Part shown: in pieces, positions 2,556 through 18,694 of the stretch | Layout of the letters: every line of letters begins with the position of its first letter | How positions within the stretch are numbered: position 1 is the first letter of the stretch | NCBI GenBank assembly: GCA_009103225.1 | Contig: RHPI01001921.1 | Coordinates: 122,719 to 186,718, forward strand | Source of the DNA: Chlorokybus atmophyticus | Lineage: Eukaryota > Plantae > Mesostigma and Chlorokybus algae | DNA: 64,000 nt | Direction: 5' to 3' | The notes under the pieces: model-generated | Told to the model about the DNA's origin: nothing | The model's database searches: none | Seen by the model: only the letters and a program-made list of their open reading frames with translations | Position numbers and translations under genes: made by a program

Positions 2556-3866
2556 ATTTCATCACCGCAACCTGTAAGCGCATACTTATGGAGCGTGTAT
2601 ATGTTAACAAAGTTGCTGTATGTTTCAACTTAGAGATAAAAATGCCACTATTTGAAATTTCCAACATCGTACACCTTGAGTGAAAGCATGTGAAGATACG
2701 CTGTTTCCCATTTATAAATTGACCAAAAATTTTCATGTTATAAGCGCAATATGCTTACACTCATTTATAAAAAGGTGCTGCGGATAGATGCCAATGAGAA
2801 TTGTATGATCCAACAATAACAAGCCTTATAATCATAGAACATGATATAAAATGCACAATGTCACTTGTGTCATTCATAATACACAATCGATGTAGCTGAT
2901 GCCGTAATTCCAACTGACTCTTCACAATTTAAAATTATAAAATTACGCATTATACCAGGGGACGTTACAATAGCTGATGAGAATCATGATAATTGTTGGG
3001 TATACCATACATCATGGTACACTACATTTTCAATCGATCATTTGGCAGATAAACTTGCCGCAACAGTTGCGCAACATATAAGGTTGTTACAATATTATAT
3101 TCGGTGTTATAGCTTGTAATATCATCATGTGTAATGCACCATTGCTTAAACATATCCACATGAAATGGGACAGTATCCATGTTTATTATTGTGAAATTAC
3201 ATCAATTACATCATGTGATAATGGGCAAGCTGCTTGGGTTATGTAATCAATATAACGAAGTTATTACTCATATTAAAATGCTAAAAACACACACCTAATG
3301 TGCGCTCTTCTTGTTGTTGATGTTTAATCTATTCAAACATTAACATAATTGCTGATCATTTATACCTATCACCAATTATCATATTTCACATTTGGTTGCT
3401 ACTTGGTACATTGCCCCTCCTGCAACCCAATTGCGCATGCCCATGATAAACATGGGGTGACCCTATGCTGTAAGTGTCGCTCACAAAATGTCTATCATGC
3501 TCGGAGTTGATCACGTGGCCGGATGGTGTCTGCCTCTGACATCACGCTTTCTGACGGACTTGCAAGACCGATATCGCTGCACGGCATGGGCGATATCGCG
3601 CGCACGGGTCAAGCAGAGCAGCAGTCAGGCTGCTAAATGAGGCGCCGTGCAGGCAGGCTTGTGCGCCACCACCAGGACGGTCACAGCGGCGGCGGCGGCG
3701 GCGGCGGAGGTAGTGGATGCTGCTAGATGATGAGGCCGGATCATCTGCAAGTCTGCTGGCCGCTTCAGGGCTGGCGGTGTCAGGTGCGCCGGGTGGTAGA
3801 AGGACGACTCTAGCCTGCTCTGGTCCGTTCTAGTCTGGACCTGGTGGGCTGGGGTAGCCGGCAGCC

Positions 3867-4101
3867 ATGCCGCCGTCAAAGATCAACACGTCTTCGGGCG
3901 ATAGCGACGGTCCGTCCTCCACCGACGCCTCTCCCAAGTCTCCCGCCAGCCACAATCCTAAGCGCAACTCCCACCCCTCCTCACCAAGTAAGCGACACCA
4001 CCACACACATTGCCTTAAAGTGGTCGAACCCGCTGTCCCATACTGTTATGTATCGTAGTAACTACACATCTGATCACGACCCAACAAGCTTCTCTATCAA
4101 T

Positions 4102-4141
<40 letters not shown>

Positions 4142-7100
4142 CCACCATCACGGTGGGCGTAAGGCTTGCCTTCGGTTCCTCACTTGTCCCAATCTCAAAT
4201 ACAAAGTCCCCTCTTCTCACCCTGGTGCATTCTGCTCCTTTTTGCGTTGGGTGTGTGTCTTGTGGTGTGCGTGCGTGACGTGCGTGTAGCAGGGCGGGCC
4301 AACGGCAGCGGGGCGGGCGGGAGCAGCGGCGTGGGCACCCCAACCGCGGCGGCCGCATCCAAGATGTCTTCGACAACAACCAAATCACCGAGCCGCAACC
4401 ACCTGCGCGCATCGTTGTCAACCAACAGCGCAACCGTCAAAGCTGGCAAAGAGTCGCGAACACACTCGGGTAGGTGTTGGATTGGTAGGGAAGAGAGAGA
4501 TGGGGTTGAGATCAGTGGTGGGCATGTGTATCAACTTCACTTTACAGAGGCGGATGTGCTAAGTCGGGTGGCTTCGCATGCCGCGGAGTGCAGGCTTGGC
4601 ATCTCACATGATGGCGATGGGGATGGCGACACATATGGTAGGCAATTACCCACGCTCGCACACAGGCGGACACGGATGAATGAACACGCATACATTCGCA
4701 CGCACGCGCGCATGCATTAGTACGTAAATGGTTGGCGCTTTGGCGCATGCCACACATCCCAAACCCCCACGCACCCATGCATACACGCACAGGCACGCAC
4801 ATGTGCACGCGCATGCATCAGTCTGCAACACGGTTGACAGTCTGAGTATGTATACGACACCTGTCTCTTGTGCGCCAAGCATTGATTATACATTGTGATC
4901 GGCACAGGCTCCTCGTTGCCATCAAGTCCTTCGTCCAAGGGCAAGACCAAGAGCAGAAGCCTCAAAAAGGACGCCAGCACGCTCTCGCCCAGGTAACAAT
5001 GAATCTGACTGTCCTATATGACTGTGCTGTGCTTGCAGACGTCCAGTTTGTAGAGTTCAGCATATGCACACAATCAACACTGTGCACACGTACAGGTCAC
5101 GTGATGAGGGCGGGCACTCAAGCACCTCTGCCAGCATTGGTAAGGCAGTGTGCTTATGAAGGTTGTACTCATTGCAGAACCAACAGAAAAGGAGACAACA
5201 TATTCATGTCAGGTGACCTGAGCCATAAGTGGGGTGAGTTGGGCGCGTCCGACACGCTGAGCACGTGGGCTTCAGATCTCTCCAACGGTGGCTGCGACTG
5301 GGGTCCATCTGAAGTGATTCGTCCCGCGTGTTCTGCGCCGGCGGGCGAGAGCCTCTTCTGCGTGGAGGACGAGAACGCCACTGCCTCCGTCGAGAGCGTC
5401 ATCAAGTGTTTCACCATCACGGACCCAACGTTGGCGGACAACCCGTGCGTGTACGCTTCCCCCGGGTTTGAAGCTCTCACGGGTTACACGTGCGAGGAGT
5501 TGGCGGGCCGCAACCTCAACTTCATGCAAGGTGCTGAGACCGAGCCTATTGCTGTGGCCGAGCTTCGTGCTGCCGTGGTTGAGAGAAGACCTGCACATGT
5601 GGAGATCACAAACTACCGTAAGGACGGGACCGCGTGGACCAACTTATTGTTTGTCGTGCCCGTCATCGACACCGCCACGGGCTCGGTTGTACGCTTCGTG
5701 GGATGCCACTTTGACTCGTCACGCGGGAAGAACAACAACAACAACAACAAGGACGAGGGCCGCATCGCACGTCTACAAGAGTCTGTCTCACGCCACGTGT
5801 CGGCCTTCGCTCTCTCCGACACAACACGGCCAGGTTGTCCCGTCACGACCATTAGCCCGGGCTTCGAGTCCCTCACCGGCTTTGCGTGTGCGGATGTTAC
5901 AACGGGACAGTTGGATTGTCTTTGCGTGCGTGCGCCCGCATCATCGGCTTTGCCGGGTGGCTCGGGTGCTGCTGCTGCACTCGCAGCTATAAAGGCAGCG
6001 GTCGGGGCAGGAAGAGCGGGAGGGGAGAAAGTCCTGTGCTGCAGAAAGGATGGCAACCCGTGCTGGCTGTACGTAACGGTGGCTCCAATGGTTGACGGGT
6101 ACGCGTGTGTGTGTGTGCGTGCGTGCGTGTGGGGTTGTGATTGTGGGTGTGCGTACGTGGGATTGCATGCGTGTGTGCATGCATGTTACTAACATGCATC
6201 AGGAGTACTGACGTGTGTGTGTGTGTGTCTGCCAGGTTGTGCATGTTAGTGTGATTCACTCATGGGGAATGCTCTCAGGGTGGAGACTTGGAAGGTCACG
6301 CGGCACCTGTGCATGTACGCGGATGTGACGTCCACGCGCCAGAAGCGCGTGGGGAAGTATCTCTTGGGGCGGGTCGTTGGCAAAGGAGCGAGCGGGACCG
6401 TCCATGTTGGCCGAAACACGCACACGTACGTAGTGTTTATCTCACATGCCAATGGTATGGCACGTGCCACGTACGCCAAGCAAAACCTTGAGTTGACTCC
6501 ACAGCAACGAGACGGTGGCTATCAAGGTTATAGACGCCTCGCGCTTCCGCAACGTTTCAGAGATAGATCAGATCAACGACGAGGTGTGCGCTTACAGATA
6601 CAGATATGTACACATGCATGCACGTGCACGTGCACACACACGCACACATACACACACATGTATGCAACTGTTCTGCGCAGATCCGGATACTGGAAACCAT
6701 CAAGCACCAGAACATCATTGGGCTGCTTGAGGTGAGTGGATACTCTGAGCGATTGTGACAAGCAAGCGTGATGACACTTCCATATGCGTGTGCAGCTGGT
6801 GTACACAAATCAGACGTTCTACTTTGTCATGGACTATGCTTCGGGCGGTTCATTGATGTCCCACATTCAGAAGCAGCCACTGAAGGTAAGAGAGAAGTGT
6901 ATGCTTTGTGCCCACGCATGCATGGTTGTGACATGCTCGTGTGTGCATGCTGTCACATTGCAGAGGCTGTCGGAAGGCGAGGCCAGGCGCGTGTTTCTCC
7001 AAATAGTGTCTGCGTTGGACTTTTGCCACCGTCGATTGATCGTTCACAGAGACTTGAAGGTGAGAGAACCAAATCAGCAACCTCACTACTTGCAATGCTT

Positions 7101-8342
7101 TGGGTCACATCCACCATGGTTGTTGGGTTGTGTTTGACCACTCCATCACAGCCGGAGAACCTGCTAATGGACAGCAACGGCGACGTCAAGATTGCGGATT
7201 TCGGGCTCAGCGCCATCATATCACCTTTTGGAGCGTCGCTCGATGTCGCGTGCGGTACTCCCGAGTTCACTGCACCCGAGATTATCGCTGGCAAGGAGTA
7301 AGTGTGATCCTCATGGCATGTCACGTGTACGTGGACACATAATTTTCTAGTTGACACTCCTTTCTGTGCTCCAGGTATGATGGTCCTGCGATTGATCTCT
7401 GGTCTCTGGGTGTGATCCTGTTCGAGCTGATTGCTGGAAGGCTGCCGTTCCCACAGAGCATGCAGAACGGCCTCTACAAAGCCATCTGCGCCGGCGTGTA
7501 CACGCCTCCCGATTTCATGTGCGTGACACTCGCACTGACCGGGCAGTAAAGCTGTTGCCAGAATTCGTTCATACCGGTAGTAATGTTAGTGTTTGTCTCT
7601 CAGGTCACCAGAGTGCAAGTCGCTGATTTCCAGGCTACTAACAGTGGACCCGCTGAAGAGAGCCACACTGCTCGAGATACGCTCGCATCCCTGGTACGTG
7701 CACGTTGTGGGTGTGCGCACTGATATACAACATCCCCACAAAGGTGAACAGCTCGGGATGCAGTCACTTCAACTCTGGAGCATCATCCTCTGCTTGTGTC
7801 TTGACTCAACTCAGGTGCAACAAAACGGGTGACGATGATGCGGTGGCTGTGCCATCCGCCGAGGACGACGCTCGCCTGCACAGGGAAGCCAACTTCAATG
7901 ACGCGCCCGCCAGCAGCGCTGAGGTGTGCATGCGCATCTGCGTGTCCATGTGCATATGCGTGAGTGTGCGCGTGTACCTTAGAGGCTGCTGTGTTGTTGA
8001 TGAGCAGGATGCGCTTACCGGCAAGTACCAGCATCTAACCATCAGGGTTGGCAATGGCGAGACATCGGAGGACAAGTTTGAGACCACCAGCGCACGCAAC
8101 TCCCCACACGGTATGGCTCTAGGCCTTGAGAGTGTTGTATCATACGGCTTGTATGTGCTGCTACAAGTCACGCTTATGTGGTGATAGAACCCAAGAAGGG
8201 CACTCCCAAAGCCAAGAACCACCTAGCAAGCACAATGCCGAATGCCGCTGCATCTTTCAAGCATGGGAGCCCCAAGCCAAGCTCCCACACTCCAACGCAC
8301 AAGAAGCACTCTGACTTCCAGTTGCCGCCAGCCCAATACTAA
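3867..8342 (+). CDS. Multi-exon PAS/LOV-PAS/LOV-Ser/Thr protein kinase (CAMK group, CIPK/SnRK-like kinase domain)
   Basis: LOV1 5407-5715 (FTITDP...NP.VYASPGF..LTGY..EE..GRNLNFMQG...NYRKDG). A degenerate LOV2 starts at about 5803. Intron 6099-6278 joins it in frame to ...RHLCMYADVT STRQKRVGKYLLGRVVGKGASGTV. Kinase motifs VAIK, HRDLKPEN, DFG, CGTPEFTAPE, IDLWSLGVILF and DPLKRATLLEIRSHPW lie in successive exons; stop TAA at 8340-8342. The start codon and 5' exons are less certain. Confidence 0.85.
4102..4140. repeat. (ATC)n microsatellite in an intron
   Basis: About 13 direct ATC units. Confidence 0.9.
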
Positions 8343-8892
8343 CGGGCTTGAAGTACCAATTGCAACATGTAGAGAAAGAGGCTCCTTTGCCATCGTGCGC
8401 TGTTCGTGTGCATATCATAAAAAGGGATACACATTGCGCTTGATGAAGCCAAGTTGTAGTGAGTTGATTCAATGAGGTTATCATGTAGTTGAGTAAATGG
8501 CAAGGGAACTACATCACTATTTGATAATTACATTATCTATCATAAAGTCTTTAAGTAGTTCTTGCAAATTATGCTCGTGTGCAAGTCGAATATATAGCTA
8601 TCAAGCTTTGCCTATCATTGCGGGTATAAAGAACGGACTTGCTAAGTTGTGCATTTGCGAGCTGGTACCGCCAAGTACACAACTAACCAACGCGACAACG
8701 ATGATGACGACGATGTTGGCGCATTGCGCTTTACATGCGCATGCTTGGAGTGTGCAAGTATAATGGCATTATACAAAAACTTGATGCAAAACCGGTACAA
8801 TTGTATTTAACTGCATCGTTGCGTTTTAACCGTCACTGTTGAAATGCATAGTAATATTACAGTTGTTGATCATTACTAGTATAAGTGTCAAG

Positions 8893-9197
<305 letters not shown>

Positions 9198-9991
9198 NAA
9201 GTTCATCCACTTATGCAACCTTTAAAATCAGCATTGCAGCATATATATTGCCGTAATGCATTGAAAATGTATTCATACCTTCACAAATGGTTGCAGTTTG
9301 TGTCTGGTGTGATATGACATGATGCCTTTTTTTTGAGAGTTATAACATAAGCAATTTGATGCAAAATCATTGTGTTGGTAACATTACAACGCAGAGAATG
9401 TTTCATGTAATTCTATGCACTTGATGAACAAGGATCCCCTTCAGGCGTTAGTCCTTAACCCAGCCTTCGTTAGCTTCCCCCACCTGTCACTGAACCCCTT
9501 TCGAGCGTCCCATCAATGTGTTGTCCTCGTCATACGCCACGTGGCAACCGAACGACGTCGACATCGCACGTGACTTCGAGCGCGACGTGACCGTCGACAA
9601 CGGACAGCTACACTGCGCGATTCCAGCCGTCGGCGGTCGACGGTCCGCGAACCTGCAGTCTTTTTTGGGCTTGTGTGTGGCTTTCTCTCATAGCAGCAGA
9701 CACGTTTGACCGGAGTGTGAATGCGTGTGTCTGTGCGTGTGTGTGTGTCTCTGTATACGCTTAGCAGCCCAGCCCCACACCGTCGCCCACGCAGAGGCGC
9801 CTGAGGAGGAGCAGGAGGAGGAGGGAGCGAAGGTGGGAAAGAGGGTGGAGAGAGCAGAAGGGAGAATAGAGGAGGGGAGAAGGGCACAGTAGTGTGTCTG
9901 GGTGGACGACGGGGTGAGGGGAGGGGCTGAGGGAGGTGTATACATTGTAAGGGTGAGTTGTGTGTGTGTGTTGCTGGGTGTTGGGGTTGGG

Positions 9992-14256: not shown

Positions 14257-17200
14257 ATGGCGGCGGCGGCGGCGGCGGGGAGGGTGAGGATGGTGGTGTC
14301 GGTGTGGGTGATGATGGCGCTTCTCTTGGGAGTGGCTGCTGGCGTCCGTGGGGTGGATGGGGGCAGCGTGGAAAGGGAGTACAGGCGTTTCCTAGCGGAC
14401 CTCACGGATGAGCTCAATGTAACGGTTGGTATGACTTCTGCATACACTGATGCTTTCATTCCCACTACTTTGGAAATGTAACTGATCTTTCACAAGAGTC
14501 GAGTTTCATTGTGTGATTTGCCAGCGTTTTGCTAAGCAGACCCGAGCACTGCACTATTTGCAGCCTGGACTCATCAGAACTAAGTCAAAGTTTAATTAAC
14601 TGAGTTAACTAAGAATATATGACCAAGGTATCAAGATTGAAGGGTTTGGTGTCTTTTGTAATAGAGGAGATAAGCACGAGTATCACTATATTATTATATT
14701 TGCAGTCACATTTATGTTTACGTGCATGCTAGGCTAGTGGCACAGTGCGATATGTGGGTTTGTCCTCATTATAGTGTAATCTGAGCGCAGAAAGGCAGCA
14801 GTTGTGCATGCATGCATCTGTCAGGATGCTGCCATCTCACTATTCGCATAAACCCTTGTGTATTGACCCTTGCTGCCACCTCTCCCGCCCCCACCTTTTG
14901 CCCCACAGTCAGTAGTCGCCCGCACCTCACTCTCACAATGCACACCTTCATGCACGTTTACACAAAACACCCACACACTCACACACTTTTGGTCTGTCTC
15001 ATTCACATGCACAAATATACATGCCCGCCCGCGCAAATGCACACGCACGCACAAACAAGCAAACAGACACGTAATTGCAGGTGACCTCTCCTCCTCCTCC
15101 TCCTCCTCCTCCTCCCCCTCCCACTCCACCACCACCTCCTCCCTCTCCCCCTCCCTCTCCCTCTCNNNNNNNNNNNNNNNNNNNNNNNNNNNNNNNNNNN
15201 NNNNNNNNNNNNNNNNNNNNNNNNNNNNNNNNNNNNNNNNNNNNNNNNNNNNNNNNNNNNNNNNNNNNNNNNNNNNNNNNNNNNNNNNNNNNNNNNNNNN
15301 NNNNNNNNNNNNNNNNNNNNNNNNNNNNNNNNNNNNNNNNNNNNNNNNNNNNNNNNNNNNNNNNNNNNNNNNNNNNNNNNNNNNNNNNNNNNNNNNNNNN
15401 NNNNNNNNNNNNNNNNNNNNNNNNNNNNNNNNNNNNNNNNNNNNNNNNNNNNNNNNNNNNNNNNNNNNNNNNNNNNNNNNNNNNNNNNNNNNNNNNNNNN
15501 NNNNNNNNNNNNNNNNNNNNNNNNNNNNNNNNNNNNNNNNNNNNNNNNNNNNNNNNNNNNNNNNNNNNNNNNNNNNNNNNNNNNNNNNNNNNNNNNNNNN
15601 NNNNNNNNNNNNNNNNNNNNNNNNNNNNNNNNNNNNNNNNNNNNNNNNNNNNNNNNNNNNNNNNNNNNNNNNNNNNNNNNNNNNNNNNNNNNNNNNNNNN
15701 NNNNNNNNNNNNNNNNNNNNNNNNNNNNNNNNNNNNNNNNNNNNNNNNNNNNNNNNNNNNNNNNNNNNNNNNNNNNNNNNNNNNNNNNNNNNNNNNNNNN
15801 NNNNNNNNNNNNNNNNNNNNNNNNNNNNNNNNNNNNNNNNNNNNNNNNNNNNNNNNNNNNNNNNNNNNNNNNNNNNNNNNNNNNNNNNNNNNNNNNNNNN
15901 NNNNNNNNNNNNNNNNNNNNNNNNNNNNNNNNNNNNNNNNNNNNNNNNNNNNNNNNNNNNNNNNNNNNNNNNNNNNNNNNNNNNNNNNNNNNNNNNNNNN
16001 NNNNNNNNNNNNNNNNNNCCCCACCCCCACCCCCACCCCCAGCCACAGCAACACCACCCACATCAACCCCAGGGTGTCCGACTAACACCCTGTGCGAGAG
16101 CGGGTGGGTGACAAGGTTGGACTCGCCATGCGTGTGCGTGCAACCCAGTATCACAGTCCAGCTGAAACTAGACTCCAGCTTCGCTGCCTTCACTGCGCCG
16201 GGCAAGCAAGCTTTGTTCGTATCCAATGTTGCTGCCGCGTGCTCGGTGCAAACCCAACAGATTGACATACTCTCCGTGCGGGCCGGGTCCGTGTACGTCA
16301 CCTTTGGGGTGAAGCCGTTGACGGGTGAGTATCTGTCGGCGTCGAGCGTGGCGGACATATCGAGAGTGTTTGTCACGGGGACGGCCGTGTTGGATCCGTC
16401 GTTCGGGAGCTATACGGTGGTTGTCACGCCGACGACAATGGCACCGCCGCCACCTCCGCCCACTGGTGATGTCAAGAAGTCATCCAAGAACAAGGTGGTT
16501 GTCATTGCGGCGGCGGCGGGTGGCGGGTCCCTGCTCATCCTTTCTGGTGAGTGTGCGCGTGCGCTTGCTCTGTATGTACATGGGTAGGCACATATGCACG
16601 TATGTTCGTGTATGTGTGTGCATGCGCGCACGCGTGCGTGCGTGCGTGTGCATATGTGTGTGTGCGTGCGTGCATGTGTGGATGTGTCCGATTGTCTCAC
16701 CCACCCTCGTTCCCCACTCTCTCACCCGCTCGCTTACTTACTTCTCATCCGCCCTGCAGCGGTGATCTGCTACTGCATCCACCGCAAGCGTGCCAGGGAG
16801 GACAGCGAAGAAAAGGACGACCTACCTGTGCCACCAATCGCACCATCATCATCCGCACCCCCACCCCCACCAGCACCAACCCGCCCTTCACCCGCACTCG
16901 CATCATCCTCAATGTCCACGCACGGCGCCCCACCTCCGCCACGTCCTCCGTCGCGCGTGCCCTCAAACCCGTCGTTAGCCCCCCCGACACCCGTATCACC
17001 CGCACTCTCAACCACGGGAAGCATCTCCTCCCCCATGTCAACAAAAGGAGGAGTGTTAGGAGTAGAGAGAGGCTCTTTGTCTCTGCGCTTCTTCCGGTTC
17101 GAAGAGTTGGAATCAGCCACGGGTCGGTTCTCACCCTCGGCGTGTTTGGGTCAGGGCGGGTCGGGTACGGTATACTTGGCTCACTTGCCGATGCCCACAT

Positions 17201-18694
17201 CACCGACAGGAGGTGCGACTCAGGTCCGTTTGGCTGCGGTGAAGTGGTTGGATGCTGATAATGGTGGGGACCACAGTGCGGGCGAGTTCGACGCGGAGCT
17301 GAGTGTCTTATCACGCCTGAGACACGAGAACTTGGTGTCTCTCATTGGCTTTTGTAATGAGGACCCGCATCGGCGACTGCTCGTGTACGAGTACGCCACG
17401 CGAGGGAGCCTCGCTAGCTGCCTGCATGTTGGGCCCAAAACAACCCAACATGGGTCGGATACACCCCCTCCCACGCCTCTCACGTGGCATGAGAGGCTGC
17501 GCATTGCTGCGGGGAGTGCAAGAGGGTTGGCGTATCTACATGATGCGGTCCCGCCGGTGGTGCACAGGGACTTCAAGCCGTCCAATGTGCTTCTGGATAG
17601 CACACTCCGGCCCATGCTAGCGGACTTTGGACTTGCGCGACAGGTTGCACCCGAGCGCACGCACGCTACCACACGCATCATGGGCACATTCGGATACGTT
17701 GCACCTGAGGTAATGATCACGAGCACACGCTTGCGCACACACAACCACACACAAGCGTGGACACATATGTACACGCATGCACGCGCGTGGGCGCAAGCGC
17801 ACATACCCACATGCGCGTGCGTGCGTGCGCGCACACACATGCAAGCACGCACGTACTCACGCACACATGCACGCGTGTACACCCACCCACACTTACGCAT
17901 CTCTCTGCATGCGTAAATGTGCTTGCGCACGCATGCATGTGGGTATGTATTACAACTGTTGTCTCACGATTGTTATCTTGTAGTACGCGATGACGGGTCA
18001 CCTGACCTCTCACTCCGACACCTACTCCTTCGGCGTGGTGTTACTAGAACTCCTCACCGGCCGCGAACCCGTCGACATGCGCCGCCCCGCAGGCGAACAA
18101 ATCCTCGTACGCTGGTGGACAACACTATCCTCAAACTCTTCGACAACACCTTCTTCAATAGCATCCGCCATCGATCCCAACATGTTGGGTCCAATTCCGA
18201 GTGTAGATGAAGCTGCTGCGGTTGGTGCAGTTGCCTCACGTTGCATCGCACCCGAGCAGGAGTCACGCCCGTCCATGAGTCACGTTGCGTGGCTACTCGA
18301 AGGGATACAAAGTGGTGCTATCACACACCCAACGCAAGTCCTCGCCGCACCCGACCGCAAACACAACAACAACAACATAGCCACGAGTCCCAGTCTCACC
18401 CGTGCAGCCACGCGTGACGTGAGGTTGCGTATCATAGAGGAGGGCCCCGCTGCTGCGGCCGACACACCAAGCAACAACATGCCCACAAAGAAGGGTGGTG
18501 GGGTGAAGTCACCCGCGGAGATAGGTGCTGGAGGATCGAGACGACAGTCGCATAGCAGGCACGGAAGCCGCGATTATGACTTTGACTTTGATGATGAGGG
18601 TGGAAGTGGTAGTGGTGATGGCCATGGTGATGGTGTGGCGAGGAGTGTTGCACCTACGGCTGCGGTGCACTCGCGGCGAGGGAGCCGCTCGTAG
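14257..18694 (+). CDS. RLK/Pelle receptor-like kinase of the extensin/ALE2-like type: signal peptide, Pro-rich ectodomain (partly in a gap), Cys-containing SEA-like module, TM helix, kinase
   Basis: Hydrophobic N-terminus MVVSVWVMMALLLGVAAG; poly-Pro; SPCVCVQPSITVQLKL and VRAGSVYVTFGV; TM VVVIAAAAGGGSLLILS|AVICYCI. Kinase motifs LGQGGSGTVY, HRDFKPSNVLLD, DFGLAR, TRIMGTFGYVAPE|YAMTGHL, SDTYSFGVVLLELLTGREPVDM. Confidence 0.88.
15166..16018. other. Assembly gap inside the Pro-rich ectodomain exon of the receptor kinase
   Basis: N run flanked on both sides by CCT/CCA/CCC proline codons. Confidence 0.95.

What the first reader, a model, noticed from the sequence alone, without database searches (positions are those of the whole stretch)
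3867..8342. LOV-LOV sensor fused to a CIPK/SnRK-type kinase: a phototropin-like architecture built from different parts
Seen in sequence: two tandem LOV-type PAS domains spliced in frame (intron 6099-6278, phase 2) to a complete kinase. The kinase has DFG (7197-7205), no insert between subdomains VII and VIII, and starts KRVGKYLLGRVVGKG. Established knowledge: phototropin kinases are AGC-VIII, with DFD and a long VII-VIII insert, while RVGKY..GR..G.G is the typical CIPK/SnRK3 start. LOV1 begins FTITDP and lacks the Cys, as I recall for plant LOV/LOV (LLP/PLP) proteins, which carry no kinase. Inference: an independently assembled PAS-PAS-CAMK sensor kinase, possibly coupling a flavin, redox or ligand signal to SnRK-like signalling.
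Basis: partly seen in the sequence, partly recalled or inferred. Interest (0 to 1): 0.88.

Follow-up and report, generated by a model that had tools for sequence, protein, structure and literature searches.

The report
Cysteine-less LOV–PAS sensor on AMPK-like kinase
This Chlorokybus gene fuses a light-sensor-type (LOV) domain that has lost its light-reactive cysteine, a degenerate second PAS domain and an AMPK-like kinase; it belongs to an uncharacterised family found across green algae, distinct from phototropin, and the reference annotation records only its kinase half.

Summary
A 17-exon, all GT-AG model (3867-8342, 871 aa) reads open from a Ser/Pro-rich N-terminus through LOV1, a helix and a degenerate PAS2 into a complete kinase. 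RNA contigs confirm 8 of the 16 junctions, but not the key one, 6098|6279. That junction rests on three things: gap-free collinear homology, relatives' transcript-sized contigs, and the last PAS2 strand lying in the first kinase exon.

The window is Chlorokybus atmophyticus. Its reference model Chrsp96S08369 covers only the kinase, starts at an ATG inside the intron, and skips an RNA-supported exon.

The gene is not a one-off. Collinear LOV–PAS–kinase proteins occur in Mesostigma, Nephroselmis, Pedinophyceae, Trebouxiophyceae, Bryopsis and Chlorophyceae, where volvocine entries are named AMPKR1.

The kinase is CAMKL. It is 42-47% identical to AMPK, SnRK1 and CIPK kinases and 25-31% to phototropins. 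It lies outside both the CIPK and AMPK/SnRK1 clades and has no T-loop threonine. LOV1 falls outside the phototropin/LLP LOV clade.

Most chlorophyte members keep the adduct cysteine. Chlorokybus has Leu and Mesostigma has Pro there, yet both keep five other flavin contacts. I read it as a sensor that cannot form the adduct and probably still binds flavin.

I found no functional study of the family. The scan's earlier notes cover this same stretch only, not other DNA.

The parts
3867..3987 (+). Exon 1, with the putative start ATG at 3867
   Evidence: Open frame and a GT donor. No RNA support and no homology. The N-terminus is therefore uncertain.
4290..4469 (+). Exon 2, Ser/Thr/Ala-rich
   Evidence: AG/GT sites and a frame continuous with exon 1. 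No RNA support.
4548..4637 (+). Exon 3
   Evidence: An RNA contig covers 4569-4636 and joins 4637|4908. The 5' boundary at 4548 is inferred from the AG; intron 4470-4547 is 78 nt and in frame.
4908..4992 (+). Exon 4, Ser/Lys-rich
   Evidence: RNA junctions 4637|4908 and 4992|5096.
5096..5139 (+). Exon 5
   Evidence: RNA junction 4992|5096. The contig runs on as GT past 5139, which fits an acceptor at 5213.
5213..6098 (+). Exon 6: N-cap, LOV1, connecting helix, and PAS2 up to strand H-beta
   Evidence: Pfam PAS_9 with two stretches, E 1.2e-20. AF2 model pLDDT 85.7, pTM 0.83. No RNA contig lies on it.
5398..5721 (+). LOV1 domain (residues 236-343). Leu replaces the adduct Cys (5515-5517), Asn replaces the phosphate-binding Arg, and His replaces the signalling Gln (5707-5709).
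   Evidence: PDB LOV hits at E 8.5e-27. Fold match to iLOV at rmsd 0.7, TM 0.93. Residue table from the alignment.
5722..5793 (+). LOV1-PAS2 connecting helix, including an Asn6 run (AAC repeat 5727-5745)
   Evidence: AF2 helix at residues 177-194 of the exon product and at 141-158 of the Mesostigma model.
5794..6333 (+). PAS2 (residues 368-487), a LOV-derived PAS domain split by intron 6099-6278. Its last strand, KVTRHLCMYAD, is in exon 7. All polar flavin contacts are lost; a CxC motif (DCLCV) remains.
   Evidence: Alignment. The PAS2 (d2) clade is supported 99/100. AF2 finds four strands in the exon 6 product and the fifth just before the kinase in the homologue.
6099..6278 (+). Intron 6, phase 2, GT..AG. 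It holds the in-frame stop at 6190-6192 and the ATG at 6262 used by reference model Chrsp96S08369.
   Evidence: No reads cover it.
6279..6425 (+). Exon 7: the last PAS2 strand, an 8-residue linker, then the kinase G-loop
   Evidence: RNA contig from 6344 and junction 6425|6505. Gap-free alignment to Mesostigma across the splice.
6505..6583 (+). Exon 8 (VAIK lysine)
   Evidence: RNA junctions.
6681..6731 (+). Exon 9 (alphaC helix, IRILETIKHQNIIGLLE), missing from the reference annotation
   Evidence: RNA junctions 6583|6681 and 6731|6796. It shows as a 17-residue gap of P0291 against AMPK.
6796..6885 (+). Exon 10
   Evidence: RNA junctions. Pfam Pkinase match.
6964..7059 (+). Exon 11 (HRDLK catalytic loop)
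   Evidence: RNA junctions. Pkinase E 8.4e-08.
7152..7297 (+). Exon 12: PEN, DFG (7197-7205), a short activation loop with Val (7245-7247) where AMPK has the T-loop Thr, then APE
   Evidence: RNA contig 7150-7300. Pkinase E 2.1e-11. HMMER alignment to AMPK.
7375..7518 (+). Exon 13
   Evidence: GT-AG sites and open frame. Pkinase match. Identical to P0291.
7604..7693 (+). Exon 14 (end of the kinase domain)
7815..7923 (+). Exon 15 (C-terminal tail)
   Evidence: GT-AG sites and open frame. Agrees with P0291.
8008..8110 (+). Exon 16
   Evidence: RNA junction 8110|8188.
8188..8342 (+). Exon 17, with stop TAA at 8340-8342
   Evidence: RNA contig 8187-8337. Identical to the P0291 C-terminus.

Best explanation
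This is one gene of Chlorokybus atmophyticus encoding an 871-aa sensor kinase. Its order is: disordered Ser/Pro-rich N-terminus, N-cap helix, LOV1, connecting helix, LOV-derived PAS2, an 8-residue linker, a CAMKL (AMPK-related) Ser/Thr kinase, and a disordered tail.

It is the Chlorokybus orthologue of an old green-algal LOV–PAS–CAMKL family that is separate from phototropin in both its sensor and its kinase.

Shown here:
- the open spliced frame;
- the domain identities;
- collinear homologues;
- the placement of kinase and LOV in trees;
- loss of the adduct Cys, one phosphate-binding Arg and the signalling Gln in LOV1;
- absence of the T-loop Thr.

Inferred mechanism:
- The kinase has every catalytic motif but no phosphorylatable T-loop residue. 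It is therefore probably not switched on by an upstream kinase.
- Instead it is probably controlled allosterically by the sensor stack. PAS2 abuts the N-lobe with no J-alpha helix, and LOV1 acts on PAS2 through the connecting helix, as in bacterial LOV-PAS-histidine kinases.
- In most chlorophyte members LOV1 keeps the full flavin/Cys set and is probably a blue-light input.
- In the Chlorokybus and Mesostigma members LOV1 cannot form the adduct but keeps five other polar flavin contacts at 50% identity. It most likely still binds a flavin and reports its redox or photoreduced state. Failing that, it serves as a fixed regulatory module.
For: One gene:
- All 16 introns are GT-AG and the frame is open over 871 codons.
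- Eight junctions are confirmed by RNA contigs. Depth is similar upstream of the PAS exon (4.8) and on the kinase (4.9-5.1).
- A single BLASTP alignment of 548 residues at 52% identity to Mesostigma P0011 spans LOV1-PAS2-kinase. Others span it at 40-46% (P0046, P0024, Nephroselmis P0048).
- There is no gap at the splice site in the alignment.
- Relatives sit on transcript-sized contigs barely longer than their coding sequence: 2742 nt for 850 aa, 4003 nt for 1033 aa.
- AF2 of the exon 6 product ends after four PAS2 strands. The Mesostigma model has the fifth strand 11 residues before kinase strand beta-1 (pLDDT 88.3, pTM 0.76).
- The rival reference model P0291 demonstrably omits RNA-supported exon 6681-6731.

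LOV1:
- PDB LOV hits at E 8.5e-27. The fold matches iLOV and Chlamydomonas phot LOV1 at rmsd 0.7-1.0.

Kinase:
- The window's own product matches AMPK alpha best (6e-63), then MARK, SIK, CIPK and Snf1.
- The tree is and the identities.
- Val sits where AMPK has the T-loop Thr. The same holds across the family, except Nephroselmis, which has Ser there.

Flavin contacts:
- N449, Q454, R467, N482 and N492 equivalents are kept in both Chlorokybus and Mesostigma. The Cys-less trebouxiophyte and pedinophyte members have lost them all.
- Identity to Mesostigma is 50% in LOV1, against 25-31% in the linker and tails.

Precedents:
- Natural Cys-less LOV domains bind flavin and respond to chemical or photoreduction. 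Halobacterial BAT-LOV is one, with Pro at the Cys site as in Mesostigma (PMC4682037).
- The best structural match to the LOV-helix-PAS unit is Brucella LOV-PAS-HK (6pps, 6ph4).
Against: - No read or contig crosses 6098|6279, and none lies on the 886-nt PAS exon.
- The reference annotation treats the kinase as a separate 391-aa gene starting at ATG 6262.
- Exons 1-2 and the start codon have no support beyond the ORF and splice sites.
- Flavin binding is inferred from conserved residues only. Three key residues are gone (Cys to Leu, Arg to Asn, Gln to His), and a bulky Leu over C4a might exclude the cofactor.
- The signalling Gln that relays N5 protonation in known LOV domains, Cys-less ones included, is His here.
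- The interdomain packing comes from an AF2 model of the Mesostigma homologue, not from this protein.
- No functional data exist for any family member in the literature I could search.
Confidence: 0.6

Rival explanations
1. There are two separate genes, as in the reference annotation: a PAS-PAS-only gene ending at the stop at 6190-6192, and a kinase-only gene starting at ATG 6262 (Chrsp96S08369).
For: - P0291, the annotated 391-aa product, starts MGNALR at 6262.
- The PAS frame reads on to a stop at 6190-6192.
- No RNA contig covers 5270-6331.
Against: - Only 69 nt would separate that stop from the ATG.
- The kinase-only product would begin with the orphan last strand of PAS2, and the PAS-only product would lack it.
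- Every homologue is collinear across this point without a gap, and several sit on transcript-sized contigs.
- The annotated model is demonstrably faulty elsewhere: it lacks the RNA-supported alphaC exon.
Confidence: 0.05
2. LOV1 is a fully blind, cofactor-free relic. The PAS-PAS unit serves only as a constitutive dimerisation or scaffold module for a kinase regulated in some other way.
For: - The Cys, one phosphate-binding Arg and the signalling Gln are all replaced.
- Other branches of the family (Pedinophyceae, Myrmecia, Apatococcus) have lost every flavin contact yet keep the protein. The architecture therefore works without a flavin.
Against: - Five polar flavin contacts are kept in both Chlorokybus and Mesostigma despite deep divergence.
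- LOV1 is twice as conserved as the linker and tails.
- This pattern differs from the branches that are truly eroded.
Confidence: 0.3
3. It is an orthologue of animal/fungal PAS kinase (PASK), which also combines N-terminal PAS domains with a CAMK-group kinase independent of activation-loop phosphorylation.
For: - The overall logic is the same: PAS-PAS, then a kinase with no T-loop switch.
- The Atlas feature search lists PASK clusters among its look-alikes.
Against: - The first PAS domain is a true LOV-type domain.
- No PAS kinase chain is among the 60 best PDB matches of the kinase. Those are AMPK, MARK, SIK, CIPK, Snf1, BRSK, SNRK, HSL1, MELK and Aurora.
- The DFGLS and GTPEFTAPE motifs are typical of the AMPK/MARK-type kinases that head those lists.
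- PASK could not be put in the tree.
Confidence: 0.03
4. It is a divergent phototropin.
For: The domain order is LOV-LOV-kinase. Surveys commonly label proteins with a LOV and a Pkinase domain as phototropin homologues (PMC8017926).
Against: - The kinase is separated from phototropin kinases by a 100/100 branch.
- It has DFG rather than DFD and no activation-loop insert.
- There is no J-alpha helix.
- LOV1 lies outside the phototropin/LLP clade.
- Chlorokybus has a canonical phototropin as well (P0059).
Confidence: 0.01

Closest known systems
Volvocine 'AMPKR1' and the 'putative LOV domain-containing protein' entries of green algae (Volvox carteri D9CJ94, Gonium, Volvox africanus, V. aureus, Dunaliella salina, Nephroselmis olivacea AML77883.1, Mesostigma Mv21778)
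   Same: - The architecture is the same and collinear: LOV1-helix-PAS2-CAMKL kinase.
- The kinase is 51-62% identical and LOV1 40-50% identical.
- They share the CxC PAS2 motif, the RQKRVGKY junction, DFGL(S/A)..PF..GTPEF, and (Nephroselmis excepted, Ser) the lack of a T-loop Thr.
   Different: - Chlorophycean, Nephroselmis and some unnamed members keep the adduct Cys (NCRFLQA, NCKFLQG and similar) and the signalling Gln.
- This gene has Leu/Asn/His and Mesostigma has Pro/Ser/His at those sites.
- None has a published function that I could find.
Phototropin (LOV1-LOV2-Jalpha-AGC VIII kinase)
   Same: A tandem LOV-type sensor lies N-terminal to a Ser/Thr kinase in a green-lineage organism. It probably works on the same principle: the sensor gates the kinase.
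   Different: - The kinase is CAMKL, not AGC.
- It has DFG, not DFD.
- It has no VII-VIII insert and no J-alpha helix.
- LOV1 lacks the Cys and the second domain is not a flavin binder.
- Both domains fall outside the phototropin clades.
Brucella abortus LOV-PAS-histidine kinase (PDB 6pps, 6ph3, 6ph4)
   Same: It is the best structural match to the whole LOV-helix-PAS unit, about 250 aligned columns at E 2e-15. In both, a LOV input passes through a helix into a cofactor-less PAS and then into a kinase.
   Different: - The output there is a bacterial histidine kinase and the protein is a dimer.
- Its LOV has the adduct Cys.
- Sequence identity is only 24%.
AMPK alpha / SnRK1 / CIPK / MARK (CAMKL kinases)
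   Same: The kinase domain is 42-47% identical. AMPK alpha is the best PDB match at E 6e-63, and the homologue's fold matches at rmsd 1.6.
   Different: - It lies outside the starred AMPK/SnRK1 and CIPK clades.
- Val replaces the T-loop Thr.
- It has no UBA, KA1, NAF or beta-subunit-binding C-terminal domain.
- It has an N-terminal LOV-PAS sensor instead.
Natural Cys-less LOV-like flavoproteins (halobacterial BAT-LOV; PMC4682037)
   Same: A LOV fold with the adduct Cys naturally replaced, by Pro in BAT-LOV as in the Mesostigma orthologue. BAT-LOV binds flavin and responds to chemical or photoreduction.
   Different: BAT is an archaeal transcription regulator. Flavin binding is untested here, and the conserved Gln is His in this protein.

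Membership tests
LOV domain (sensu stricto photosensor) | PAS fold with LOV-type sequence | tested here: met
   LOV1 matches only LOV chains at the top of the PDB list, E 8.5e-27. The AF2 model has pLDDT 95-98 over LOV1, and its core matches iLOV at TM 0.93, rmsd 0.7.
LOV domain (sensu stricto photosensor) | Adduct-forming Cys in GXNCRFLQ | tested here: not met
   LOV1 reads GRNLNFMQG, with Leu codon CTC at 5515-5517. PAS2 reads LDCLCVRAP, with the Asn, Arg and Gln of the motif lost.
LOV domain (sensu stricto photosensor) | Flavin cofactor bound | not testable with these tools
   Five of eight polar contact positions are kept in LOV1 and none in PAS2. This needs recombinant protein and spectroscopy.
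Phototropin | AGC VIII kinase with DFD and an activation-loop insert | tested here: not met
   The motif is DFG at 7197-7205 and DFG-to-APE is 28 residues. The phototropins in the comparison set show DFD plus inserts. The tree splits them at 100/100.
Phototropin | J-alpha helix between LOV2 and the kinase | tested here: not met
   About 8-11 residues separate the last PAS2 strand from kinase strand beta-1, with no helix. This was read on the AF2 model of the Mesostigma homologue and on the alignment.
CAMKL group (AMPK/SnRK/MARK-like) | Kinase domain nearest to CAMKL kinases | tested here: met
   For the window's own product P0291 the best PDB hits are AMPK, MARK, ssp2, SIK3, CIPK23/24, Snf1 and BRSK2. 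Identity is 42-47%. The kinase sits on the CAMKL side of the tree.
AMPK/SnRK1 | Activating T-loop Thr (AMPK Thr172 position) and C-terminal regulatory domains | tested here: not met
   Val at 7245-7247 aligns with the Thr. There is no UBA, KA1 or AMPK C-terminal domain in Pfam. The starred AMPK/SnRK1 clade excludes it.
CIPK/SnRK3 | NAF/FISL domain, and placement in the CIPK clade | tested here: not met
   There is no PF03822 hit in the window's product, whereas the CIPK hits carry it. The CIPK clade (100/99) excludes the family. A sister relation is not rejected (AU p 0.25). The RVGKY..GR start is the only CIPK-like trait.
PASK (PAS kinase) | Orthology of the kinase and PAS domains to PASK | tested here: inconclusive
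   No PAS kinase chain is among the 60 best PDB matches, and PAS1 is LOV-type. PASK sequences could not be fetched for the tree.
Green-algal LOV-PAS-CAMKL family ('AMPKR1'-type) | Collinear LOV1-helix-PAS2-kinase with the family motifs | tested here: met
   Single alignments span all three domains. The kinase falls with the family, which forms one side of a branch at 79/56. PAS2 lies in the family clade at 99/100, and LOV1 is sister to the Mesostigma LOV1 at 98/96.

The most novel reading that the evidence does not exclude
Green algae carry a second, ancient family of LOV-regulated protein kinases that has not been recognised as its own class. Its layout is LOV-PAS-CAMKL, and it is as old as the chlorophyte-streptophyte split. 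It couples blue light to AMPK/SnRK-like signalling without a T-loop switch. In the Chlorokybus and Mesostigma members the photosensor has become a flavin sensor that cannot form the adduct and reads flavin redox or photoreduction through a His in place of the usual Gln.
Probability: 0.3. Interest if true: 0.8.

Novelty: new variant of a known kind. Interest (0 to 1): 0.55.

Why it matters
- **A second LOV-kinase design.** Phototropin is treated as the LOV-kinase of the green lineage, and surveys label proteins with a LOV and a Pkinase domain as phototropin homologues (PMC8017926). A recent review of algal photoreceptors did not turn up such a family in my term search (PMC12558739). A separate LOV–PAS–AMPK-like kinase family, present from Mesostigma and Chlorokybus to Volvox, would be a second, independently built way of putting a Ser/Thr kinase under a LOV sensor. 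It would also link light or redox state to an energy-signalling type of kinase.
- **A natural series for study.** The family contains Cys-bearing members, members without the Cys that keep the flavin pocket, and fully eroded members. This series is well suited to asking how LOV signalling changes or is lost.
- **A different coupling geometry.** The short, helix-free PAS2-kinase junction differs from the J-alpha mechanism used in optogenetics.
- **An annotation error.** The Chlorokybus reference gene model is wrong. It lacks the whole sensor half and the alphaC exon.

Tried and rejected
Gene model:
- My first by-eye exon coordinates were off by a few bases and gave stops. I replaced them with exact splice-site anchoring.
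- I rejected acceptors 5178 and 5192 for exon 6. With RNA-supported exon 5096-5139, 5178 breaks the frame. Both fit the contig's overhang worse than 5213.

Reads and contigs:
- RNA reads: only three small runs were offered, and one holds the gene at depth about 5. None covers the PAS exon or the key junction.
- The look-up of encoding contigs for P0291 returned nothing on record.

Literature:
- Searches for AMPKR1, LOV+CAMK(L), phototropin-like+SNF1, LOV+AMPK-like+Volvox, and Volvox+gametolog+AMPK found no description of the family.
- Glantz et al. 2016 (PMC4801262) deposited several family members as 'putative LOV domain-containing protein'. It is not held, so I cannot say how that paper classed them.
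- The REC-CAMK proteins of Mamiellales (PMC12704426) are unrelated.

Other searches:
- The Atlas feature search returned only generic PAS+kinase clusters.
- The N-terminal 210 residues show no significant homology to Mesostigma.

Rejected readings: phototropin, CIPK, SnRK1 and PASK membership (see the membership tests).

Full report
**Gene structure**

Reading 3500-8800 and the open segments of all three forward frames, I anchored each exon on exact splice-site strings. The result is 17 exons, every intron GT..AG, running from ATG 3867 to TAA 8340-8342, for 871 codons with no stop.

Logan contigs of RNA run X1 laid on 3500-8800 show spliced joints at 4637|4908, 4992|5096, 6425|6505, 6583|6681, 6731|6796, 6885|6964, 7059|7152 and 8110|8188. 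All eight match the model exactly. Contig depths are 4.8 upstream of the PAS exon and 4.7-5.1 on the kinase.

The contig that crosses 4992|5096 runs two letters (GT) past the donor at 5139. That fits an acceptor at 5213 (exon starts GTGAC), and only that acceptor keeps the frame cleanly. I therefore start exon 6 at 5213 rather than 5178.

The tool warns that such holes prove nothing. Exons 1-2 also have no RNA or homology support.

**What the parts are**

- *Exon 6.* Its product gives Pfam PAS_9 in two stretches (E 1.2e-20).
- *LOV1 (5398-5721).* Its best solved relatives are all LOV domains: a Meiothermus LOV histidine kinase at 8.5e-27, then aureochrome, phototropin and Brucella LOV-HK.
- *AF2 model of the exon 6 product* (family alignment A2; pLDDT 85.7, pTM 0.83). 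LOV1 has pLDDT 95-98. A helix follows at 177-194, then a second PAS with only four strands before the exon ends.
- *Foldseek on that model.* It places the LOV1 core on iLOV (rmsd 0.7) and Chlamydomonas phot LOV1 (rmsd 1.0). The whole LOV-helix-PAS unit lands on the Brucella LOV-PAS(-HK) structures 6pps and 6ph4.
- *Kinase exons.* They match Pkinase piece by piece and carry GKGASG, VAIK, the alphaC Glu, HRDLKPEN, DFG (7197-7205), APE and the subdomain XI Arg.

**Organism and reference annotation**

A kinase-domain search returned P0291, 'jgi/Chlat1/9084/Chrsp96S08369' of Chlorokybus atmophyticus. It is encoded exon for exon by this window.

That 391-aa model starts at ATG 6262, which lies inside my intron 6. 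It omits exon 6681-6731, which the RNA contig includes. Against AMPK it shows a 17-residue hole exactly at the alphaC helix. The LOV-PAS half did not turn up in any protein search. The gene is therefore mis-annotated in the reference.

The same species has a canonical phototropin (P0059, AHZ63908.1) and an LLP-like twin-LOV protein (P0037). NCRFLQG is present in all four of their LOV domains.

**Is the fusion real?**

An exhaustive HMMER search with the PAS exon found proteins matching the whole query in one stretch. Pfam shows they are PAS_9 x2 + Pkinase.

Locally, the spliced model aligns in single HSPs across all three domains:

| Protein | Identity | Aligned length (aa) |
|---|---|---|
| Mesostigma viride P0011 | 52% | 548 |
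| P0046 | 46% | 582 |
| MMETSP transcript P0024 | 42% | 604 |
| Nephroselmis olivacea P0048 | 40% | 617 |

In the multiple alignment there is no gap at the splice. The window reads VAPMVDG|VETWKVTRHLCMYADVTSTRQKRVGKY, against IFPLFDF-MTRKVTRHLCLYVDITCARQKRVGKY in Mesostigma.

Several relatives come from contigs barely longer than their coding sequence, so they are single mRNAs.

An AF2 model of Mesostigma residues 226-765 (alignment A1; pLDDT 88.3, pTM 0.76) has this order: LOV1, a helix at 141-158, PAS2 with its fifth strand at 255-265, then kinase strand beta-1 at 277. In the window that fifth strand is encoded after the intron, in the first kinase exon. A two-gene reading would leave a PAS domain without its last strand and a kinase beginning with an orphan strand. 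I put the two-gene rival at about 5%.

**The family**

Further searches add these members:
- Volvox carteri 'AMPKR1m' (D9CJ94), Gonium 'AMPKR1' / 'AMP-activated protein kinase', Volvox africanus, V. aureus, Pleodorina, Astrephomene and Tetrabaena;
- Dunaliella salina, Haematococcus and Chromochloris;
- Myrmecia, Apatococcus, Symbiochloris and Elliptochloris;
- Bryopsis and Pedinophyceae sp.

The family thus spans Chlorophyta plus the two deepest streptophyte lineages. No land-plant or higher streptophyte member appeared, although the searches were capped.

**Kinase placement**

The window's kinase domain is 51-62% identical to family members, 42-47% to AMPK, SnRK1 and CIPK kinases, and 25-31% to phototropins.

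In a maximum-likelihood tree (45 rows, 272 columns):
- phototropin kinases split off at 100/100;
- CIPK (100/99) and AMPK/SnRK1 (100/99) are starred clades without any family member;
- a starred branch (97/85) unites CIPK, AMPK/SnRK1 and two other CAMKL kinases against the family.

The family is one side of a branch (79/56). AU tests reject neither a CIPK sister (p 0.25) nor an AMPK/SnRK1 sister (p 0.13). It is a distinct CAMKL lineage, so 'CIPK-type' overstates the case.

No NAF, UBA or KA1 domain is present. The residue aligned with AMPK's activating Thr is Val (7245-7247). It is non-phosphorylatable in the other five aligned members except Nephroselmis, which has Ser there.

**LOV placement and the state of the pockets**

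In a tree of 50 LOV domains:
- the family's second domains form a starred clade (99/100);
- its first domains lie outside the phototropin + LLP (+ glaucophyte) clade (88/81);
- the window's LOV1 is sister to that of Mesostigma (98/96).

The motif table shows the adduct Cys kept in Tetrabaena, Volvox, Astrephomene, Dunaliella, Haematococcus, Chromochloris, P0046, P0024 and Nephroselmis. It is lost in Chlorokybus (Leu), Mesostigma (Pro), Pedinophyceae, Myrmecia and Apatococcus.

Chlorokybus and Mesostigma changed the same three positions: the Cys, the adjacent Arg, and the terminal Gln (to His). Both keep the equivalents of N449, Q454, R467, N482 and N492. The other Cys-less branches lost everything.

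Identity to Mesostigma is 50% in LOV1, 41% in PAS2 and 62% in the kinase, against 25-31% in the linker and tails. The Cys-less LOV1 is therefore under constraint.

PAS2 has lost all polar flavin contacts in every member. It keeps a CxC motif, and in many members, this one included, the first Cys sits at the canonical position.

**Mechanism (inferred)**

The catalytic core is intact and there is no T-loop switch. PAS2 is joined to the N-lobe by about 8 residues without a J-alpha helix. LOV1 connects to PAS2 through a helix, as in Brucella LOV-PAS-HK. Together these suggest allosteric control of the kinase by the sensor stack.

For the Cys-bearing chlorophyte members, a blue-light input is the natural reading.

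For this gene the adduct is impossible. Because the remaining pocket residues are retained, I favour a bound flavin whose redox or photoreduced state is sensed. Yee et al. showed that Cys-less LOV proteins signal through the neutral semiquinone. They also showed that natural Cys-less LOV domains, such as BAT-LOV with Pro at the Cys site, bind flavin and respond to reduction (PMC4682037).

The Gln-to-His change and the bulky Leu are reasons for doubt. A cofactor-free structural module remains a serious rival at about 0.3.

**Literature**

I found no functional description of the family.
- A 2025 review of algal photoreceptors did not turn up such a family in my term search; its kinase passages concern phototropin and neochrome.
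- A plankton survey labels LOV proteins that carry a Pkinase domain as phototropin homologues.
- Several members were deposited as 'putative LOV domain-containing protein', a label the same AML accession series also gives to many plant phototropins. From memory, these are from Glantz et al. 2016, which is not held. I cannot exclude that the class was noted there.

**Verdict**

It is too narrow on kinase type, and it is wrong in treating the gene as a lone invention: this is one, secondarily Cys-less, member of an old and uncharacterised green-algal family.

Noticed in passing
window 6262-8342: Reference gene model Chrsp96S08369 (P0291, 391 aa) starts at an ATG inside intron 6. It omits RNA-supported exon 6681-6731 (alphaC helix), and the LOV-PAS half of the gene turned up in none of the protein searches.
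   Followed up: yes
window 8894-9198: An uninterrupted run of about 304 C ends in an N, roughly 550 nt downstream of the stop codon. It looks like an assembly gap or artefact rather than biology.
   Followed up: partly
window 17047-17715: tblastn of the kinase product also touches this stretch (26% identity, E 2e-8). This suggests another protein-kinase gene in the window.
   Followed up: no
window 4100-4150 and 5727-5745: A (CAT)n microsatellite lies in intron 1. An (AAC)6 repeat encodes Asn6 in the LOV1-PAS2 linker. Many introns are TG/CA-rich.
   Followed up: no
PAS2 of the family (window 5794-6333; alignment): PAS2 keeps a conserved CxC motif, such as DCLCV or SCLCLCGPET. In many members the first Cys sits at the canonical LOV adduct position, although every polar flavin contact is lost. 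Its role is unexplained; a redox or metal function is possible.
   Followed up: partly
Family members outside the window: The adduct Cys of LOV1 appears to have been lost several times: in Chlorokybus and Mesostigma, in Pedinophyceae, and in Trebouxiophyceae. The pocket is retained only in the first case.
   Followed up: partly
Mesostigma P0011 and P0151-P0154: Five annotated isoforms of the Mesostigma orthologue range from 682 to 872 aa. Two of them (P0151, P0152) align with this gene's model only up to a point inside the kinase domain. This suggests alternative splicing or unreliable gene models.
   Followed up: no
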